A DNA stretch of 64,000 bases from Polymyxa betae A26-41. Taxonomy: Eukaryota > Protista > Endomyxa: Phytomyxea. Every line of letters starts with the position of its first letter. Position 1 is the stretch's first letter. Below are positions 12,647 to 55,787 of this stretch, piece after piece. The notes beneath the pieces are model-generated. The model was not told where the DNA came from. It saw only the letters and a list, made by a program, of their open reading frames with translations, and searched no databases. The position numbers and the translations under genes were made by a program. The stretch is taken from assembly GCA_003693705.1 (NCBI GenBank), contig RBZT01000219.1, forward strand, positions 1 to 64,000, written 5' to 3'.

Positions 12647-13234
12647 TCAACAGAGCACTTTTTCTTTTGGCGAAGTTTCAAAGACAAGAACGATTTGGAT
12701 GCCGACTGTTCCGCTGGCCTCAACTTGATTTTTAGAGTTCCAGAAATCAGATTCAGCGATCGCCGCTAAACATGAATCAACAACTGAAGCGGAACTCGTA
12801 TAACTGAAACCCACGTTAAAATGATGCAATGAGGCAATCCACCATTCAGGCTTGTTTGTAGGAAAATGATCAATAGTCCTGAACATTAATACCAAATCTT
12901 TATACTGTTCACAAGGTTTATCAAGTAATCTTGAGCGATGACTGAAACCTACCAGATTATTAAATCCATTTTCAAGATCTGTCAGCGTGGGTTTGGGCGC
13001 CCTGTTGACAATGGGCAGAGATGCTTCCTTTATAAAACGTTCAAATAAATCCAGCGACTTAACGATATTCTGAATCTCATCAGCAGCATTCAAGTATAAT
13101 GGAATAAAACCCACTTGGAATGCTTGAATGGCACCGCCAGATACGTTGACGTCGACCGAAAAATCCCCGGCGTTTGGCTCTGGCCGGACGACATAACTTA
13201 GAAGGACGAATATAGCAAGAATTAGAGATGTCAT
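12647..13234 (-). CDS. Intronless putative secreted protein, unknown function
   Basis: Hydrophobic leader MTSLILAIFVLLSYVV; about 195 aa open frame, with alternative upstream ATGs to 13315; no recognisable domain. Confidence 0.55.
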   Translation of the reverse strand: MTSLILAIFVLLSYVVRPEPNAGDFSVDVNVSGGAIQAFQVGFIPLYLNAADEIQNIVKSLDLFERFIKEASLPIVNRAPKPTLTDLENGFNNLVGFSHRSRLLDKPCEQYKDLVLMFRTIDHFPTNKPEWWIASLHHFNVGFSYTSSASVVDSCLAAIAESDFWNSKNQVEASGTVGIQIVLVFETSPKEKVLC

Positions 13235-13557
13235 CAGATTTGAATATAAAAAAGAAAGCGGATCCATTAAAGCAATGAAGGGAACCACAGAGACACGACC
13301 CATCAAAGCCATCATCTGTGATTCCGACCATGCATGGAGGGAGCGACCTCCAGAGAGTCATGCCTCTCTCCTTCACTCTATTCGATGTACTGTATGACCA
13401 TATAGAAACAGCCAAACAGGTGCCAGATGGGGCTTAGGTTACATCAACATCGGGGTCATGGGGTGACCATGTATAGGTTTAGTAATCCAGATCTAATTCG
13501 GAATAAATAGAATTGGAAAAGTTGGCCATTGCCAGTTGTATTCATGTTTATGCCATT

Positions 13558-14457
13558 CTAGATGATATCGTGGAAGGGGATTCCTTTATTGGGCCACGAG
13601 AGAAGATCTAAGGCAGTGGCTAATAACAGCAAGTGTAGCATTTCAACGTTGTCATCGCCAGAAAAAACATCTTCAGGAAAGGTTATATGAGGATATAACT
13701 TCCTCAACCTCCATCTATGAAATCGATATTCGCGTTTCAGATATCGTTCAAAAAATCCCAACGTCATTGAACGAACAGCGTCCGAATACTCGGATTCCTT
13801 TTCTTCCGTGTTCAATTCCTCGGCGAGGATTTGACCGCCAGCCATAATCTTGGCTTGATGTTGGGGGTGCCTGCCTGCAATCGCTTGGCTCACATGCTGA
13901 ATCATTGATTGCATTCTAGGTGTATATTGATGGAAGAGAGACATTCGGGCCTGATATTCAGCTTCGTACTCTTTCCTCGTCATTTCTCTTAGCAGATTAA
14001 ATATTTGAAGTATCTCAGACGTGTCGTGATCTATGGTCGTCATTTCTTCTGGCAGATCAAACATTTGAATCAACTCAGAAATGGCAACAACAACCCCGAT
14101 CTGGGCTAATTCTTTCGCCATAGCATCTTCTGGCTCTAGGCTTGAGGTACAGTCTTTCTCGATAGTTACAGCATCATCTGGTTGAAGTGCTTCTTCTGGG
14201 TCGTTATCCTGCGATTCCGAGCAGAAAGTCATGATGGAATCGCCTGGTTTAATCCGGATGCGTTGTGGCTTAAGCATAGTCTTTTGCTGAATACAACTAG
14301 CCCCCTGAGGTCGATCAAATAACATATCAGGCTGATTAGGGGCAGAAAACCATCTGGCATTGAGAAGTGTAGGAAATGTGACAGTATTACTGATAACAGC
14401 TGCAGATGCATTTAATAGTAGATAGAGACTAACATAGCTGAACGTCAACGTAAACAT
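13558..14457 (-). CDS. Secreted family paralogue A (signal peptide + transit-peptide-like segment + conserved helical core)
   Basis: 299-aa intronless ORF with signal peptide MFTLTFSYVSLYLLLNASAA; the core aligns by eye with 16426-17229 and 17898-18692. Confidence 0.8.
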   Translation of the reverse strand: MFTLTFSYVSLYLLLNASAAVISNTVTFPTLLNARWFSAPNQPDMLFDRPQGASCIQQKTMLKPQRIRIKPGDSIMTFCSESQDNDPEEALQPDDAVTIEKDCTSSLEPEDAMAKELAQIGVVVAISELIQMFDLPEEMTTIDHDTSEILQIFNLLREMTRKEYEAEYQARMSLFHQYTPRMQSMIQHVSQAIAGRHPQHQAKIMAGGQILAEELNTEEKESEYSDAVRSMTLGFFERYLKREYRFHRWRLRKLYPHITFPEDVFSGDDNVEMLHLLLLATALDLLSWPNKGIPFHDII

Positions 14458-14747
14458 TTGATACGATAACCTGTAGCTGGAATGTCGATGTGACAGTCTT
14501 ATGCCTCAGTGCGTCTATCGGGCACGGCCAACTCGTTACCTCAACATATCTTATGTATAGAGGTACGTTCTGGGCTGCCGTCATGCTGGCACCCTTAAAC
14601 ATCTTTGACATTGGATGAAACCTGAGAGGTAAATGCGGGATAGGTTTATTGCAGGAGGTGGAGATGGAATCCTGTGAGATACTCTGATAGACAAAGGTTA
14701 TCGAGATGAGTGCATTTGAAGTTGGTATTGTTACCATGCATTTGAAG

Positions 14748-15464
14748 TCATTTAGCATTCAGCCAAAGACAGGGCTTCAGTACAAGAGTTATCAACGACA
14801 AATAGAGCAGACGGATCAGATTCTGATATGGATTACTGTCATAAACAATGATCTTTTCAGGGATCTCTATATATGGATATGATATTTTTAATCTGCTGCG
14901 ATAATTACGGTAATATGAACGAAGACATCGCCTATAGAAAGCCACTGACATGGTTGCATGTCCAACATCATAACATAGATAGGGGTCTGACCAATAAATT
15001 CAGCAAATACTCTGCCACCATCAATATTCTTGATCAGGACGAATCTCAGCAAATACAATACTCATTTCTACAATGGTAGATTGCATTTCTGGTGTAGCTG
15101 ATCAAGCATAGTGATTCGTGCATGAATAAATTCGGGATTATATTGCAGAATCTCGTATCTGGACATGTTAAAATCTGAATAACATCAGACAGAATGAGAC
15201 TCAGCCAATTGTTTGCTGAGGGCATGAAATAAATCTTTTTCTTTAATCCTGTGATTGTGAAGCAGATACCAAAACAGGATATCGCTGTTTCCCGGCCAAT
15301 AATGATTAGTTCAAGCTTGCTTTTGAACAGTAATCGTGCCGCTCTGAGGCGACGCTGAAGAGAAAGCATCCGCCCCTAGGCCATGACGAAAATGAGCAGA
15401 CAGTATTGGGCGAACAAGTTGGCACAAAATATAGAATAACTAAACTCAATACAAGGTTGAGCAT
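14748..15464 (-). pseudogene. Frameshifted paralogue B of the secreted family
   Basis: Family motifs are spread over several frames: MLNLVLSLVILYF (signal), LSKQLAE, LSDVIQI, FNMSRYE..ARITMLDQ, TPEMQSTI, IDGGRVFAE, MSVAFYRR..SYPYIEIPE..LLYLSLITLVLKPC. At least four frameshifts. Confidence 0.75.
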
Positions 15465-16425
15465 TTGCTCTCACGAGCATGATGCTCGAAAGAACTCCCT
15501 AATTGAAGCAGAAACCCTTGACAGTGACAGGGCCACATTTTGATAAGCGCAAAATGTTTCAACAGTTTTTCATTCACTGTGTTTCATGAATCATGACGAA
15601 AATACCGCGTTTTTTCTGGTCTCGTGGCTTTCGTCAACTATTTCGTAAAGCGGCATTTGATATGTTCAACTTGTTGCTGATACAGTGATGCATCCCTGAG
15701 GTGTAAAGCGCACGTCGTTGACCCCTGATATGATGACGTCGATTGCTGGACTTGTTATAAGGACCTCTTTTATATATAGCATACTCGAGGACGTGCTAAG
15801 TCCCAACTTATCCATCATTCAACCCATATCATTCCTAAAGAATCAGTTAACAGAATCTCTAATCTAGGCTGACAATGTCCTGGGCCGGTATGTCTGACCT
15901 TTCGACCATGCTCTCGAATCGAGTCCCGGTTCAGATGGGATCCTCTATTGTCATCTCAAAAGCGAATACGTCCGTCTAGAAGATAGATGCATATATTCTC
16001 CTATGATGGAAATGACGTACAAGATGAACCAGTAATATGAACCTGTGATTCCAAATGTGGACGGATATCACAGTAGTTAGTTGATCAAGATGATACTGCA
16101 ATATGTCTTATGATGTAAAGACAATATGGTCCAAGATTACACATTATAATTGTATACATGCTGCTGGATTTATAGCTAAGTTACATCCTGAATACCAATA
16201 AGATTACTGATAATGGAGAACGTACCGCTGATAATTCACTTGAAGAGGTTATGCTGATGAGTATAAAGCCCCGGATCTCATCTATTGCCAGGAAACCCTT
16301 TTATCTTTCACGGTATTCCATTGACAGGAAAGAATTTTGCGAATTGGCGCGGATCAATCACTCACTCTTGAGTGTTGTTGTCTTTCACAATCTGAGCTTC
16401 TCTCCTTTAGATTGCAGCAGTATTA

Positions 16426-17229
16426 ATGATGACTCCTGTATTAATATTCGTAATGATGATACATATGATATGTATTACATCATCAACTACTATTACCAAT
16501 ATCAATCATGTTGTATATACGGGCTCTAAACCTCTCTCTGCCCTCGGCTTCACTTCTGCTGCATTCCTCAAGAATCGCCCTTTGCCAACTTATTTTCAAT
16601 ATCAGCCAGGACTTCATTTCCAACCACTCTCTACAACTTCCCGCAAACGATTCGATGTGGTGAAGTGCTCGTCTCGGTCACCCGACGAAGTCCAACCAGA
16701 TGGTGATCCAATCATGTCACGATTCGACGAGTTCAGTTCTATCATTGTTCTCTCCGATATGATGAACATGTTCAACATGGAACGCGGCTGCTGGCTTTGG
16801 TTCAGCGAAGATGAATGCTCCAGGAGACTCTCAATGCTGGACCAGTATGTCCCACGTATGCAGTTCATGATTAAGCTGGTCTCTAAGGCAATTGCATTCA
16901 AGAATTCAGAACATACAGAGCGGATTCTGGAGTGTGGTGAAGTGATTGCTACAGCCCTGGCTGATATTTCATCTACAAGATTCCCTAGATGGTATACAAG
17001 TGGATCTCAAAACCTCGAAATTGATCCATTGGCGATGCAATTCTTTGAGCGATTTCTGATGAAAGAATATCAATCGTTGAAATCACAGGTGCACAAGTTG
17101 TATCCTCAACTGACTATCTTGGATCATGTCAAGATGGTTACGAAAGCATACGAAATCCAGACCCAGCTACTTCATCTCTGTATTCTCACAATCGCCTTGA
17201 AATCCTGCATTTTTACCAAACATCAATAA
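16426..17229 (+). CDS. Secreted family paralogue C (inverted orientation)
   Basis: 267-aa intronless ORF with a signal peptide and shared blocks LSDMMNMFNM, RLSMLDQYVPRMQ, FFERFLMKEY..LYPQLTI and LLHLCILTIALK. Confidence 0.8.
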   Translation: MMTPVLIFVMMIHMICITSSTTITNINHVVYTGSKPLSALGFTSAAFLKNRPLPTYFQYQPGLHFQPLSTTSRKRFDVVKCSSRSPDEVQPDGDPIMSRFDEFSSIIVLSDMMNMFNMERGCWLWFSEDECSRRLSMLDQYVPRMQFMIKLVSKAIAFKNSEHTERILECGEVIATALADISSTRFPRWYTSGSQNLEIDPLAMQFFERFLMKEYQSLKSQVHKLYPQLTILDHVKMVTKAYEIQTQLLHLCILTIALKSCIFTKHQ

Positions 17230-17897
17230 ACATCTTTTTCGTGGTTTCCATCAACCAAGAGAGAGCCTTTACTGCGGTTTACCAATGGGGTTCTGTCTGC
17301 AATGATTGTAGTATTGCAGTAAGATGTGACCGATTAGCGCCAACCAGTATAATGCCAACGAAACCAGGCCCTCGCACACAGTCGATGACAATGTTGGTAC
17401 CGCCTTGGATGATCCGTTGTCGGTGTTTGGTCGACTGGCATTCATCTGGCTCAGGTTTTAATCACGAGTTGTATCTGGCACATGTGCTGCCCCATTTCAG
17501 GCGATTATGGACTCTAAAACGCTGATTTTGAACATTAGGCAACAATCAAGTTAATGACGCGTTTTTTAAAATGGTCAAAAAATGAGCAACCAGTTATGCT
17601 TTGCTGGTGGTTTTTTGGTTGACAGAATATTCTGGGAATTTTACGTGATTAAGGCCAACAATGACAAGTGCCAACAAATGTATAGTATCGGGCTGGTCAT
17701 GCTGCTAAACATGTCTCTCAAGACGCTGAAAATGTCGCTTGATGTGATAACAATATAGGCTTGATTGCTGACACGTTATAAACTACAAACAAGCATACGA
17801 GAGTATATAGACAACTGCAGTTTACGCTGCTTTATTCTGAATAAACAAAGTATAATTAAATCAGATGAAACAAAATCAAAGTAGTAGACTTGATTAA

Positions 17898-18692
17898 TTA
17901 ATTCATTTCTATCAGAGCACAAGGCTTTAATGCAAGTGTTAATAAAGCCAAGTGTAGAAAATAAACTTCAACGTGATATGGATTATCTTGGTCGATGTCC
18001 AGATCTTCGGAAATCGTCAGATGTCGGTACCTTTTCCTTAAAACCGATCGGCAAGCACGGATTTCTTGCTTCAGGTAATGATGGTAAACCGAAACTGCCA
18101 TAAGACGCATGGCATTCAGCTTTATGGGCGTCTGATTATGACTGGTCCCATCGCTTGCATTGCGTCGGTAGATTGCCATTAGGACCTTATTCAGAGAGTT
18201 AGCTAAAACAGACCCGCCGTCGATAATTTTAGAGCAATGCTCTGGATGCCTTGAAGCCATAGCTTGGCTTCCAGTCAATATTGCATATTGGATCTTGGAT
18301 AGATGCCGGTAGAATACAGAAAGACGAACGACAACTTCGTCGTTATCGATATCCGACCAGTCCTTTTCAGACATATTGAAGATCTGGATGATATCGGAGA
18401 GAACTGGGATTACACCAATCTCAGCTAATTCCTTCACCTCCGTATTGTTAGGATCTGACGATTCGCCCGAAAATCTTGCAGCCTGAATAGGCTTGAGTCG
18501 ATTGCTGCGTAGCGCTTGAAACGAATTTGGTACGAGTCTCTTGATAGCGAATGGACATCTTCCAACTTGGAACGGAGCCAGCTTGTGTTCAAACAAAGAC
18601 ACCATATTGAAAGCTGTAGGTGCGACCACCGAAGTGGCCGTCGATGACGCTTGTTGCGAGAGAACGAAGACTATCACCAGGAGCGCATACAT
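17898..18692 (-). CDS. Secreted family paralogue D
   Basis: Probable start MYALLVIVFVLSQQASS at 18692; shared blocks KELAEIGV..LSDIIQIFNM, SQAMASRHPEH..KIIDGG and FLHLALLTLALKP. Confidence 0.8.
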   Translation of the reverse strand: MYALLVIVFVLSQQASSTATSVVAPTAFNMVSLFEHKLAPFQVGRCPFAIKRLVPNSFQALRSNRLKPIQAARFSGESSDPNNTEVKELAEIGVIPVLSDIIQIFNMSEKDWSDIDNDEVVVRLSVFYRHLSKIQYAILTGSQAMASRHPEHCSKIIDGGSVLANSLNKVLMAIYRRNASDGTSHNQTPIKLNAMRLMAVSVYHHYLKQEIRACRSVLRKRYRHLTISEDLDIDQDNPYHVEVYFLHLALLTLALKPCALIEMN

Positions 18693-19137
18693 TATAAATG
18701 AATGATAGGAAGAGTGATAAGCAGAGAGACGAGGTGTTTCCACTGACAGAGAAAGGAAGGTCGACCAGCGTGCCTTTTGCTCACATTGGATTGACAACGA
18801 GACAATGACACGTCGACCGCGTCCAGAGCACGTCCACAGGTCACCATGTGGTCGCACCTGTCCACTGTCCGTCAGTCAAGAACGTGACTGTCCATCCAGC
18901 TATTGGGCACTGGATCACAGTTGCGCCACAAAACCAAATAGACAATCAGTTCTCCCAATACGGCGGCAACCTACATTCGGTCGTTTGGAAGCGACAACGG
19001 ATTCGAACATGAACTGCTTTTTGTCACGGCGCGGTGTCAAACCATCACAACATCAAATGGGTTTTAAAAACAGCGATATTTCACTCAGCAGCAAACTGCA
19101 TTATTATTCAGGCCAGTAAGAGTCGCTGATAGAGATA

Positions 19138-54809: not shown

Positions 54810-55787
54810 TCATCGCGAAAATGTCCCAATTCTTTCATTAACTCGAACCAGGGTTTCAATTCCTCTGAATGACCACTGAGCCAGGTCGCGGTCCCAATCA
54901 ACAGCTCGCTCATATACAACCAAGATGTCGCTGCCGCCGAACTGGAACATACCAATTTCGTCGCCTTTGGCGATATCAGCGCCCTCCTCGATAGACATTG
55001 TTACGGTCCCGACGTCTTCGGCGCCAATCGGAATGAACAGGACAGCGCCGTTTAAAGGAGACTCAATCAACACGATTGTTCGCGTATTTTCACAAAGCAC
55101 ATTGACATCGCTCTGTAGCGCCTTCGATTTGACTGTAAAATATTCGCCTGGGATGTGCTCCATCAGAGCGACCTTGCCGGAAACTGGAGCGTGGAATCGA
55201 TGGTAATCCATCGGGTGCAATCGGAAATTAGCCACACTTGATTCGGGGGTAAAGCGATGCAAGAGGTCAGGACGACCGTGACACACACGATTGCCCAGTA
55301 GGGCAGAGAAATTAAAACGTTTTCCCTTGATGTACAGACGGCGTGCTTCTCGTAGCGAATCGAAAACAGTAAGGCGACAGTCGGCAGCCGATGTGATAAC
55401 AGCATCATCATCAGGAGCAGCGACCGGGCGGCATTCAGGACGAATCTCACGAATGAAGAAATCGTTGAAATTACGGAAAGCGTTGGGATTATCTTGAATA
55501 AAATCGCTCATGTTAATCTCATAGAAATCAACGAAGGACGGTATCTGCAATGACGATGTGTACGTCGTATGCGATTTGCGTGATCGGAAAGTTTGACGCT
55601 TCAGCCAGCGTCGAATGAAGTGGAAGCGGTCAAATATATCCATGGGCCAGGAGTACAGGATTTCGTTCACGAGCCAAGCTAAAATCGGTTCGCGCTCCCG
55701 AGCCATGGCCATCCGATGTCGGTCATACATCTCTGGACCAAGTTCGCGTGTGTAAAGATGATAAATCAGACCGATAACGGCGCCCAT
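54810..55787 (-). CDS. PSD: Phosphatidylserine decarboxylase proenzyme (type II / GGS-type), intronless
   Basis: FNDFFIREIRP, SAADCR, RLHPMDYHRFHAPVSG and KGDEIGMFQFGGSD (autocleavage GG/S). Confidence 0.92.
   Translation of the reverse strand: MGAVIGLIYHLYTRELGPEMYDRHRMAMAREREPILAWLVNEILYSWPMDIFDRFHFIRRWLKRQTFRSRKSHTTYTSSLQIPSFVDFYEINMSDFIQDNPNAFRNFNDFFIREIRPECRPVAAPDDDAVITSAADCRLTVFDSLREARRLYIKGKRFNFSALLGNRVCHGRPDLLHRFTPESSVANFRLHPMDYHRFHAPVSGKVALMEHIPGEYFTVKSKALQSDVNVLCENTRTIVLIESPLNGAVLFIPIGAEDVGTVTMSIEEGADIAKGDEIGMFQFGGSDILVVYERAVDWDRDLAQWSFRGIETLVRVNERIGTFSR

What the first reader, a model, noticed from the sequence alone, without database searches (positions are those of the whole stretch)
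13558..18692. Secreted family with signal peptide + chloroplast-transit-peptide-like leader: candidate host-plastid-targeted effectors
Seen: in each intact paralogue, a signal peptide of about 20 aa is followed by 50-60 residues rich in S/T/P/F/R/K and poor in acidic residues (one Asp in C, one Glu in D, three Asp in A). These end RKRFDVVKC|SS (C), RSNRLKPIQA|AR (D) and RIRIK...MTFC|SE (A), then switch abruptly to an acidic run before the conserved core. Established: plant chloroplast transit peptides have this composition and often a (V/I)-x-(A/C)|A/S cleavage site, and some pathogen effectors mimic them. Inference: this is a family of effectors secreted into a plant or algal host and imported into its plastids or mitochondria. 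If the organism has its own complex plastid, these would instead be ordinary bipartite plastid leaders. I do not recognise the core domain.
Basis: partly seen in the sequence, partly recalled or inferred. Interest (0 to 1): 0.82.

Follow-up and report, generated by a model that had tools for sequence, protein, structure and literature searches.

The report
Polymyxa secreted family with transit-like leader
A sugar-beet root parasite (Polymyxa betae) carries a small private gene cluster whose proteins start with a secretion signal followed by a stretch resembling a plant plastid import signal, so they may be sent into the host's plastids, but no import or expression was shown here.

Summary
Three intact paralogues (A, C, D) and one frameshifted copy (B) sit in one cluster and occur nowhere else in the genome. 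Each intact copy has a signal-peptide-like start, then 53-61 acid-poor, net-basic, Pro/Phe-rich residues that are poorly conserved and model as disordered. An acidic run and a conserved all-helical core follow. Ser/Thr enrichment is clear only in C.

The assembly matches the Polymyxa betae draft (1,001 contigs, about 27.09 Mb). P. betae is an obligate parasite living inside sugar-beet root cells. No plastid hallmark family (TIC20, TIC22, Tic110, SufBD, DXR, LytB, FabZ) was found in the genome. Its ATP synthase beta has a classical mitochondrial presequence.

The family has no detectable relative in 1.84 billion representative proteins, the PDB or JGI metagenome contigs.

The scan had noted similar leaders on other DNA of this genome. 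I confirmed two, on bacterial-type ArgC and argininosuccinate lyase, enzymes that are plastid-located in plants. This suggests a real sorting class.

Host-plastid import remains plausible but untested. No predictor or RNA evidence was available, similar composition occurs in about 17% of sampled ORFs, and A fits poorly. It would be a new member of a known kind, the transit-peptide-mimicking effectors.

The parts
13558..14457 (-). Paralogue A, intact, 299 aa. Signal-peptide-like residues 1-19 (14401-14457); leader residues 20-79 (14221-14400); acidic run about residues 80-112 (14122-14220); helical core residues 113-299 (13561-14121). It contains a 60-nt tandem duplication at 13964-14079.
   Evidence: structure model (leader pLDDT below 35, core all-helical)
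14748..15464 (-). Paralogue B, broken. Signal-peptide-like start at 15464. Recognisable core pieces lie in at least three different frames. The C-terminal piece 14748-14951 matches the family profile. It was left as it is.
   Evidence: E 6e-4; E 5e-10
16426..17229 (+). Paralogue C, intact, 267 aa. Signal-peptide-like residues 1-20 (16426-16485); leader residues 21-81 (16486-16668), the most transit-peptide-like of the three (21% Ser+Thr, 1 Asp), ending VVKC|SS; acidic run about residues 82-102; helical core to 17226.
17898..18692 (-). Paralogue D, intact, 264 aa from the first ATG. Signal-peptide-like residues 1-17 (18642-18692); leader residues 18-70 (18483-18641) ending PIQA|A; acidic/polar linker residues 71-86 (18435-18482); helical core (17901-18434).
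14491..14496 (-). CTGTCA motif 39 nt upstream of the ATG of A. The same sense-strand hexamer lies at 15519-15530 (twice, upstream of B) and at 18744-18749 (upstream of D). C has only an inverted copy, at -104.
   Evidence: 0.077 copies expected per 200 nt on one strand

Best explanation
This is a Polymyxa betae-specific, tandemly duplicated family of secreted all-alpha-helical proteins, that is, candidate effectors. It evolves by gene birth and death.

Proposed route:
1. The N-terminal signal peptide takes the protein into the parasite's ER and out across the plasmodial membrane. Because the plasmodium lies in the host cytoplasm, this releases the protein into the sugar-beet cell cytosol.
2. 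Signal-peptide cleavage exposes an unstructured, acid-poor, basic leader rich in Pro and Phe. This leader then acts as a mimic of a plant transit peptide and engages the host plastid import machinery, possibly also the mitochondrial one.
3. The leader is removed near the (V/I)-x-(A/C)|(A/S) site, releasing an acidic helical protein inside the organelle.

Shown here: the architecture, the paralogy, the lack of relatives, the identity of the organism, the absence of plastid hallmark genes, and the recurrence of the leader type on plastid-pathway enzymes.

Inferred only: secretion, arrival in the host cytosol, import, cleavage, and any activity of the core.
For: 1. Organism. G000 has 1001 contigs and 27,085,814 b. 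The P. betae draft has 1,001 contigs, 27,085,946 bp and 45.1% GC (PMC6328671).

2. Real genes. Three open frames of 264-299 codons share 28-41% identity in the core, while a fourth copy has decayed by frameshifts. A sense-strand CTGTCA lies upstream of A, B and D.

3. Signal-peptide-like starts occur on all copies, with h-regions of 10-14 apolar residues and small residues at -3/-1.

4. Leader. It has 1.6-5% acidic residues and net charge +4 to +6. It models as disordered. It is poorly conserved in sequence but conserved in composition. Its length of 53-61 aa is like that of plant transit peptides (own knowledge). The single [VI]x[AC][AS] site of C and of D lies exactly at the leader end.

5. 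Same architecture on bacterial-type enzymes of the same genome:
- ArgC has an 89-aa extension before the TIGR01851 match. Its best relatives are Burkholderiales proteins at about 59% identity that lack the extension.
- Argininosuccinate lyase has a 69-aa extension before the TIGR00838 match.
- Their leaders have 26% Ser+Thr, 12-13% Pro and no acidic residue.
- Both enzymes work in plastids in plants (established knowledge). Neither would find its substrate in a secretory lumen.

6. The leader is not the organism's mitochondrial signal. ATP synthase beta starts with a classical Arg/Ser/Ala presequence and has no hydrophobic start.

7. No sign of an own plastid: no hits for TIC20, TIC22, Tic110, SufBD, DXR, LytB or FabZ.

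8. Precedent. The rust effectors CTP1-3 have a signal peptide followed directly by a functional, cleaved transit peptide, in a lineage-specific polymorphic family (bioRxiv 10.1101/019521).
Against:
- Leaders A and D have only 13-15% Ser+Thr. A has three Asp and no cleavage-type motif.
- By alignment, the leader end of C falls inside the acidic run of A, so the supposed cleavage sites are not at homologous positions.
- Comparable acid-poor, basic N-proximal stretches occur in 13 of 76 sampled ORFs.
- Regions just after the signal peptide of effectors often give false transit-peptide calls: 5-21.8% with plant predictors, and 15.6% for HaRxLR candidates (PMC5353544).
- A conserved hydrophobic C-terminal helix (Kyte-Doolittle 19-residue mean 1.36, 1.51 and 1.86) could hold the proteins in a membrane.
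- The leaders of the family and of ArgC show no significant sequence similarity (E 0.19 and 0.37).
- The host tissue is root, so the target would be non-green plastids.
Confidence: 0.4

Rival explanations
1. The family is secreted as candidate effectors, but the leader is only a disordered spacer, a pro-region, or a trafficking or processing region. The mature proteins act in the host cytosol or at the host-parasite interface, not in an organelle.
For: - Signal-peptide-like starts and an orphan, fast-evolving cluster.
- The leader composition is common in this genome (13 of 76 ORFs).
- A and D are poor in Ser and Thr.
- Effector N-termini are known to give false transit-peptide calls.
Against: - No RxLR, PEXEL, LFLAK or CHxC motif, and no conserved dibasic site in the leaders. 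A has no dibasic site there at all.
- The same leader type on ArgC and argininosuccinate lyase is hard to explain as a mere spacer.
Confidence: 0.3
2. These are parasite-resident proteins of the secretory pathway or cell surface, for example of the plasmodial envelope, the zoosporangium wall or the spore wall. They would be held by the conserved hydrophobic C-terminal helix and never released into the host.
For: - The C-terminal segment with the conserved pattern L-H-L...L-T-x-A-L has a Kyte-Doolittle 19-residue mean of up to 1.86 in D.
- The signal-peptide-like start would give a type I membrane topology.
Against: - The uninterrupted apolar run is only 11-13 residues and is followed by a conserved Lys (Asp in A). 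A and C fall below the usual 1.6 threshold.
- The sequence of the helix is conserved, as expected for a packed helix rather than a membrane anchor.
Confidence: 0.12
3. These are ordinary bipartite leaders for an organelle of the organism's own that is reached through the ER. That would be a cryptic complex plastid or another endosymbiont-derived compartment, or the contig would come from a contaminating alga.
For: - The architecture is that of complex-plastid leaders, and it also occurs on ArgC and argininosuccinate lyase.
- Other unchecked notes of the scan list plastid-like genes in this genome.
- The assembly was binned from a metagenome.
Against: - No TIC20, TIC22, Tic110, SufBD, DXR, LytB or FabZ anywhere in the assembly.
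- The nearest relatives of ArgC are Burkholderiales, not algae or cyanobacteria.
- The argininosuccinate lyase gene is a 60-66% GC island with flanks falling to 40-50% GC downstream. That fits an acquired gene in this genome, not a foreign contig.
- Plasmodiophorids are not known to have plastids (established knowledge).
Confidence: 0.04
4. These are unexpressed or decaying ORFs without present function, and the leader pattern is a by-product of composition.
For: - One of the four copies is already broken.
- The products are absent from the public protein collections searched.
- There is no RNA evidence.
Against: - Three frames of 264-299 codons stay open at 42-45% GC even though synonymous sites are saturated.
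- The core is conserved at protein level.
Confidence: 0.06

Closest known systems
Melampsora larici-populina CTP1/CTP2/CTP3 (rust effectors that mimic chloroplast transit peptides; bioRxiv 10.1101/019521, later Petre et al. 2016)
   Same: - A signal peptide is followed directly by a transit-peptide-like region. In CTP1 it is 83 aa, is predicted, and was shown to be necessary, sufficient and cleaved.
- The family is small, lineage-specific and polymorphic, with no similarity to known domains.
- The pathogen is an obligate biotroph of a plant.
   Different: - There is no sequence relationship (0 hits).
- The CTPs are built from Cys-containing modules, whereas this core is an acidic helical domain.
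- Rusts deliver from haustoria across an extrahaustorial membrane, whereas Polymyxa lies in the host cytoplasm.
- Import is demonstrated for the CTPs and untested here.
Plasmodiophora brassicae small secreted proteins predicted by LOCALIZER to go to chloroplasts or mitochondria (PMC7317818)
   Same: Same order of parasites and the same logic: of 32 candidates with a signal peptide, 3 were predicted chloroplastic and 3 mitochondrial.
   Different: - Those are predictions on unrelated proteins.
- No homologue of this family was detected in any public proteome.
Bipartite plastid-targeting leaders of algae with complex plastids and of apicomplexans
   Same: A signal peptide followed by an acid-poor, basic transit-like peptide of 50-60 residues, then the mature protein.
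   Different: The organism shows no plastid import, SUF, MEP or FASII genes. The plastid reached, if any, would be the host's.
Puccinia striiformis Pst_12806 (haustorial effector translocated into wheat chloroplasts; PMC6895047)
   Same: A secreted effector of a biotroph that enters host chloroplasts (abstract).
   Different: It is an unrelated protein with a known host target. Nothing is known about the target of this family.

Membership tests
Transit-peptide-mimicking secreted effectors (functional class, CTP1 type) | N-terminal cleavable signal peptide | tested here: inconclusive
   Heuristics only. The start is uncharged and hydrophobic (best 11-residue Kyte-Doolittle mean 1.85 in A, 2.82 in C, 3.06 in D), with small residues at -3/-1. 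A is weak. SignalP was not available.
Transit-peptide-mimicking secreted effectors (functional class, CTP1 type) | The producer is a pathogen of a plastid-bearing host and has access to the host cytosol | tested here: met
   The assembly matches the Polymyxa betae draft in contig number and length. The intracellular lifestyle is taken from PMC6328671 and established knowledge.
Transit-peptide-mimicking secreted effectors (functional class, CTP1 type) | [quoted passage not shown] | not testable with these tools
   This needs GFP fusions and import assays.
Plant-type chloroplast transit peptide (compositional definition) | Very few acidic residues, net positive charge, unstructured, about 40-80 aa | tested here: met
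   1.6-5% acidic, net charge +4 to +6, 53-61 aa. pLDDT below 35 and no secondary structure across the acid-poor stretch (about residues 38-109).
Plant-type chloroplast transit peptide (compositional definition) | Enrichment of hydroxylated residues (Ser+Thr about 25-30%, own knowledge) | tested here: inconclusive
   C has 21%, A 15% and D 13%. The ArgC and ASL leaders of the same genome have 26%.
Plant-type chloroplast transit peptide (compositional definition) | (V/I)-x-(A/C)|A type processing site at the end of the leader | tested here: inconclusive
   Present once, and only at the leader end, in C (VKCS) and D (IQAA). Absent in A. Such motifs are loose.
Bipartite leaders for an own complex plastid | The genome encodes plastid import and housekeeping machinery (TIC20, TIC22, SUF, MEP, FASII) | tested here: not met
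   No hits for PF16166, PF04278, PF16940, PF01458, PF02670, PF02401 or PF07977 in the whole assembly. Caveats: the search works exon by exon, the assembly is 91% complete by CEGMA, and the Tic110 control rang nowhere.
Mitochondrial presequence of the organism itself | Arg-rich amphipathic N-terminus without a preceding hydrophobic core | tested here: not met
   The ATP synthase beta of the same genome has that form. The family starts with a hydrophobic segment, and the helical hydrophobic moment of its leaders is low to moderate (0.32-0.55).
RxLR, PEXEL or Kex2-processed effector leaders | Conserved RxLR, RxLx[EQD] or dibasic motif in the leader | tested here: not met
   No RxLR or PEXEL motif. 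A dibasic site is present in the leaders of C and D but at non-aligned positions, and none in A.
Any known protein family or fold for the core | Significant sequence or structure match | tested here: not met
   Pfam none; word search none; exhaustive HMM search 0 hits; PDB profile search 0 hits; Foldseek on a low-confidence model gave best E 1.2. The protein atlas gave only weak neighbours of ARM/HEAT helical-repeat type.

The most novel reading that the evidence does not exclude
Polymyxa betae runs a general route of signal peptide plus transit-peptide mimic into the plastids of the sugar-beet cell. The route would carry not only this orphan helical family but also horizontally acquired bacterial enzymes of arginine synthesis (ArgC and argininosuccinate lyase, and perhaps the ACCase, GNAT and CPS noted by the scan). 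The parasite would then re-equip the host's plastid metabolism with its own enzymes.
Probability: 0.2. Interest if true: 0.9.

Novelty: new member of a known kind. Interest (0 to 1): 0.55.

Why it matters
Plasmodiophorids are hard to study, and almost nothing is known about how Polymyxa betae, the vector of rhizomania virus, handles its host cell.

A parasite lying naked in the host cytoplasm needs only a signal peptide to reach the host cytosol. A transit-peptide mimic would then be a simple way into host plastids, which are the seat of amino-acid, fatty-acid and defence-hormone synthesis.

If this family is imported, and especially if the acquired arginine-pathway enzymes with the same leader are too, it would be the first case of a eukaryotic parasite sending its own proteins and enzymes into host plastids on a broad scale. 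Standard localisation assays can test this directly.

Tried and rejected
Searches for relatives or a fold, all empty:
- Pfam scan of A, C and D.
- Word-index search with the family alignment.
- Exhaustive HMM search of 1.84 billion representative proteins.
- PDB profile search.
- JGI metagenome scan.
- Protein atlas: nothing for A; only weak helical-repeat neighbours for D.

Structure: both AlphaFold models were poor (mean pLDDT 42 and 50). The Foldseek search on the better one gave only meaningless helical matches.

dN/dS: synonymous sites are saturated, so no estimate was possible.

The control therefore rests on 241 kb only. For the same reason the N-termini of ACCase and CPS could not be read.

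Literature: the two Polymyxa papers of 2022 are not in the library. The supplements of the eLife secretome paper hold no sequences to map onto this locus.

Readings rejected:
- RxLR, PEXEL or Kex2-type leader.
- Own mitochondrial presequence.
- Own plastid.
- Homology between the family's leaders and the ArgC leader.

Paralogue B was left broken. It was only read frame by frame.


Full report
**What is there**

Between 13558 and 18692 lie three intact paralogous ORFs and one decayed copy.
- A: 13558-14457 (-), 299 aa.
- C: 16426-17229 (+), 267 aa.
- D: 17898-18692 (-), 264 aa from the first ATG.
- B: 14748-15464 (-), broken.

Searches of the whole assembly, both with protein A and with a profile of the family, find only these four copies, all in this cluster.

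B keeps a signal-peptide-like start and recognisable core pieces, but they lie in at least three frames. I left it as it is.

The intact copies align over a helical core of about 165-190 residues at 28-41% identity. The N-terminal 70-110 residues align at only 13-22%. Synonymous sites are saturated, so no dN/dS could be obtained. Three frames of 264-299 codons that stay open at 42-45% GC, next to a copy that has broken, argue for genes under protein-level constraint. A sense-strand CTGTCA lies 39-66 nt upstream of the ATG of A, B and D, where 0.077 copies are expected per 200 nt.

**The leader**

Each intact protein begins with an uncharged hydrophobic segment with small residues at -3/-1. It is strong in C and D and weaker in A.

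The next 53-61 residues have these properties:
- Acidic residues: 3 (A), 1 (C) and 1 (D), that is 1.6-5% against 12-18% in the rest of each protein.
- Net charge: +4 to +6.
- Pro 8-10% and Phe 7-9%.

An acidic run follows, with 20-33% Asp+Glu over 30 residues, and then the core.

AlphaFold gives no structure for the leader (pLDDT below 35) and an all-helical core at low confidence.

The pattern [VI]-x-[AC]-[AS] occurs once in C and once in D, each time exactly at the leader end. It does not occur in A.

- Ser+Thr is clearly raised only in C (21%). A has 15% and D has 13%.
- By alignment, the leader end of C falls inside the acidic run of A.
- The composition is not rare. Shuffles give p of 0.006-0.02 per protein, but 13 of 76 ORFs of at least 150 aa in a 241-kb sample of this genome have a comparable stretch at residues 21-75. 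Among the seven ORFs with a signal-peptide-like start, only C and D do.

**The organism**

The assembly has 1001 contigs and 27,085,814 bases. The Polymyxa betae draft genome has 1,001 contigs, 27,085,946 bp and 45.1% GC (PMC6328671).

P. betae is a plasmodiophorid, an obligate parasite living inside sugar-beet root cells, and the vector of rhizomania.

TIC20, TIC22, Tic110, SufB/D, DXP reductoisomerase, LytB and FabZ/FabA give no hit anywhere in the assembly. The controls rang for all of these except Tic110.

The organism's mitochondrial ATP synthase beta starts with a classical Arg/Ser/Ala presequence and has no hydrophobic core. The two-part leader is therefore not this organism's way of marking mitochondrial proteins.

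**The lead that changed my reading**

Earlier notes of this scan list two-part leaders on other DNA of the same genome. I checked two.

- An intronless ArgC (L039:850-2055:-, 402 aa) matches NCBIfam TIGR01851 over residues 90-396. Its best relatives are Burkholderiales proteins of about 313 aa at about 59% identity that lack the first 89 residues.
- An argininosuccinate lyase (L037:212-1618:+) matches TIGR00838 from residue 70. The gene is a 60-66% GC island with flanks falling to 40-50% GC downstream, which fits an acquired gene rather than a foreign contig.

Both extensions are a textbook signal peptide followed by 47-64 residues with 26% Ser+Thr, 12-13% Pro, 9-13% Lys+Arg and no acidic residue. 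The ArgC leader ends in P-I-Q-A followed by an acidic patch, much like D. The similarity is not statistically significant (E 0.19), so the leaders are analogous, not homologous.

In plants these enzymes work in plastids (established knowledge). Neither would find its substrate in a secretory lumen or in the host cytosol. This makes it likely that "signal peptide plus transit-like peptide" is a functional sorting class in P. betae, and the family's leaders belong to its weaker end.

**No relatives and no fold**

Every search for a relative was empty: Pfam, the word-index search, an exhaustive profile search of 1.84 billion representatives, the PDB and JGI metagenome contigs.

The atlas gives only weak neighbours of the ARM/HEAT helical-repeat kind for D. 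Foldseek on the low-confidence model gives nothing (best E 1.2).

The family is thus private to Polymyxa, or too diverged to be recognised. [quoted passage not shown] Its files hold no sequences, so I cannot tell whether this family is among them.

**How it most likely works**

1. The signal peptide leads to secretion across the plasmodial membrane, directly into the host cytosol.
2. The exposed leader is taken for a transit peptide by the host plastid import machinery, perhaps also by the mitochondrial one.
3. The leader is cleaved near the end motif, and an acidic helical protein acts inside the organelle.

Every step after the architecture is inference. I put this at about 0.4.

The main rival (0.3) is a secreted effector whose leader is only a disordered spacer or pro-region. 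No RxLR, PEXEL or conserved dibasic motif supports a specific alternative. However, such regions are known to give false organelle predictions (PMC5353544).

A second rival (0.12) is a parasite surface or wall protein held by the conserved hydrophobic C-terminal helix. That helix has only 11-13 uninterrupted apolar residues followed by a conserved charged residue, so a membrane span is doubtful.

An own ER-routed organelle (0.04) and dead ORFs (0.06) are minor rivals.

**Comparison with what is known**

The closest known system is the rust CTP1-3 family. It has a signal peptide followed directly by a functional, cleaved transit peptide, in a small lineage-specific family of unknown function (bioRxiv 10.1101/019521).

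In Plasmodiophora brassicae, 3 of 32 small secreted candidates were predicted chloroplastic by LOCALIZER (PMC7317818).

The idea is therefore not new. The family is new, and the setting is favourable, because the parasite lies naked in the host cytoplasm and enzymes carry the same leader.

**Not done**

- SignalP, TargetP and LOCALIZER are not available here.

Noticed in passing
L039:850-2055 (-), G000:C503: Intronless ArgC of the bacterial argC_other type. Its best relatives are Burkholderiales proteins at about 59% identity. It carries an added 89-aa N-terminal extension: a signal peptide, then a Ser/Pro-rich leader with no acidic residue that ends P-I-Q-A.
   Followed up: partly
L037:212-1618 (+), G000:C935: Argininosuccinate lyase with a 69-aa two-part extension. 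The gene is a 60-66% GC island (GC3 78%) with flanks falling to 40-50% GC downstream, as expected for a recent bacterial acquisition. The ORF leaves the ASL frame near its 3' end, and the ASL_C2 domain continues in another frame, so there is an intron or a frameshift.
   Followed up: partly
L045:2146-3060 (-), G000:C439: ATP synthase beta has a classical mitochondrial presequence (Arg/Ser/Ala-rich, no hydrophobic core). It serves as the in-genome contrast to the two-part leaders.
   Followed up: yes
window 13964-14079: A 60-nt tandem duplication (77% identity) inside the core of paralogue A. It adds about 20 residues that C and D lack.
   Followed up: yes
window 14491-14496, 15519-15530, 18744-18749: A sense-strand CTGTCA lies 39-66 nt upstream of the ATG of A, B (twice) and D. 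C has only an inverted copy at -104. It may be a shared promoter or initiator element.
   Followed up: partly
window 12647-13315 (-): The neighbouring 222-aa orphan ORF has a hydrophobic N-terminal region, no Pfam match and no similarity to the family.
   Followed up: no
window 54810-55787 (-): Phosphatidylserine decarboxylase gene. Its closest named relatives are fungal (Zoopagomycota and others) and Plasmodiophora brassicae (34% identity). The best hits (74% identity) come from unnamed public assemblies.
   Followed up: no
window 18693-18857 (-): The open frame of D continues 55 codons upstream of its first ATG, to a GTG, with no ATG in between. The gene most likely starts at 18692.
   Followed up: partly
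whole assembly G000: No hits for TIC20, TIC22, Tic110, SufBD, DXR, LytB or FabZ. Unchecked notes of the scan nevertheless list plastid-like genes elsewhere in this genome (a phosphate translocator, HCF101 architecture, PLGG1-like).
   Followed up: partly
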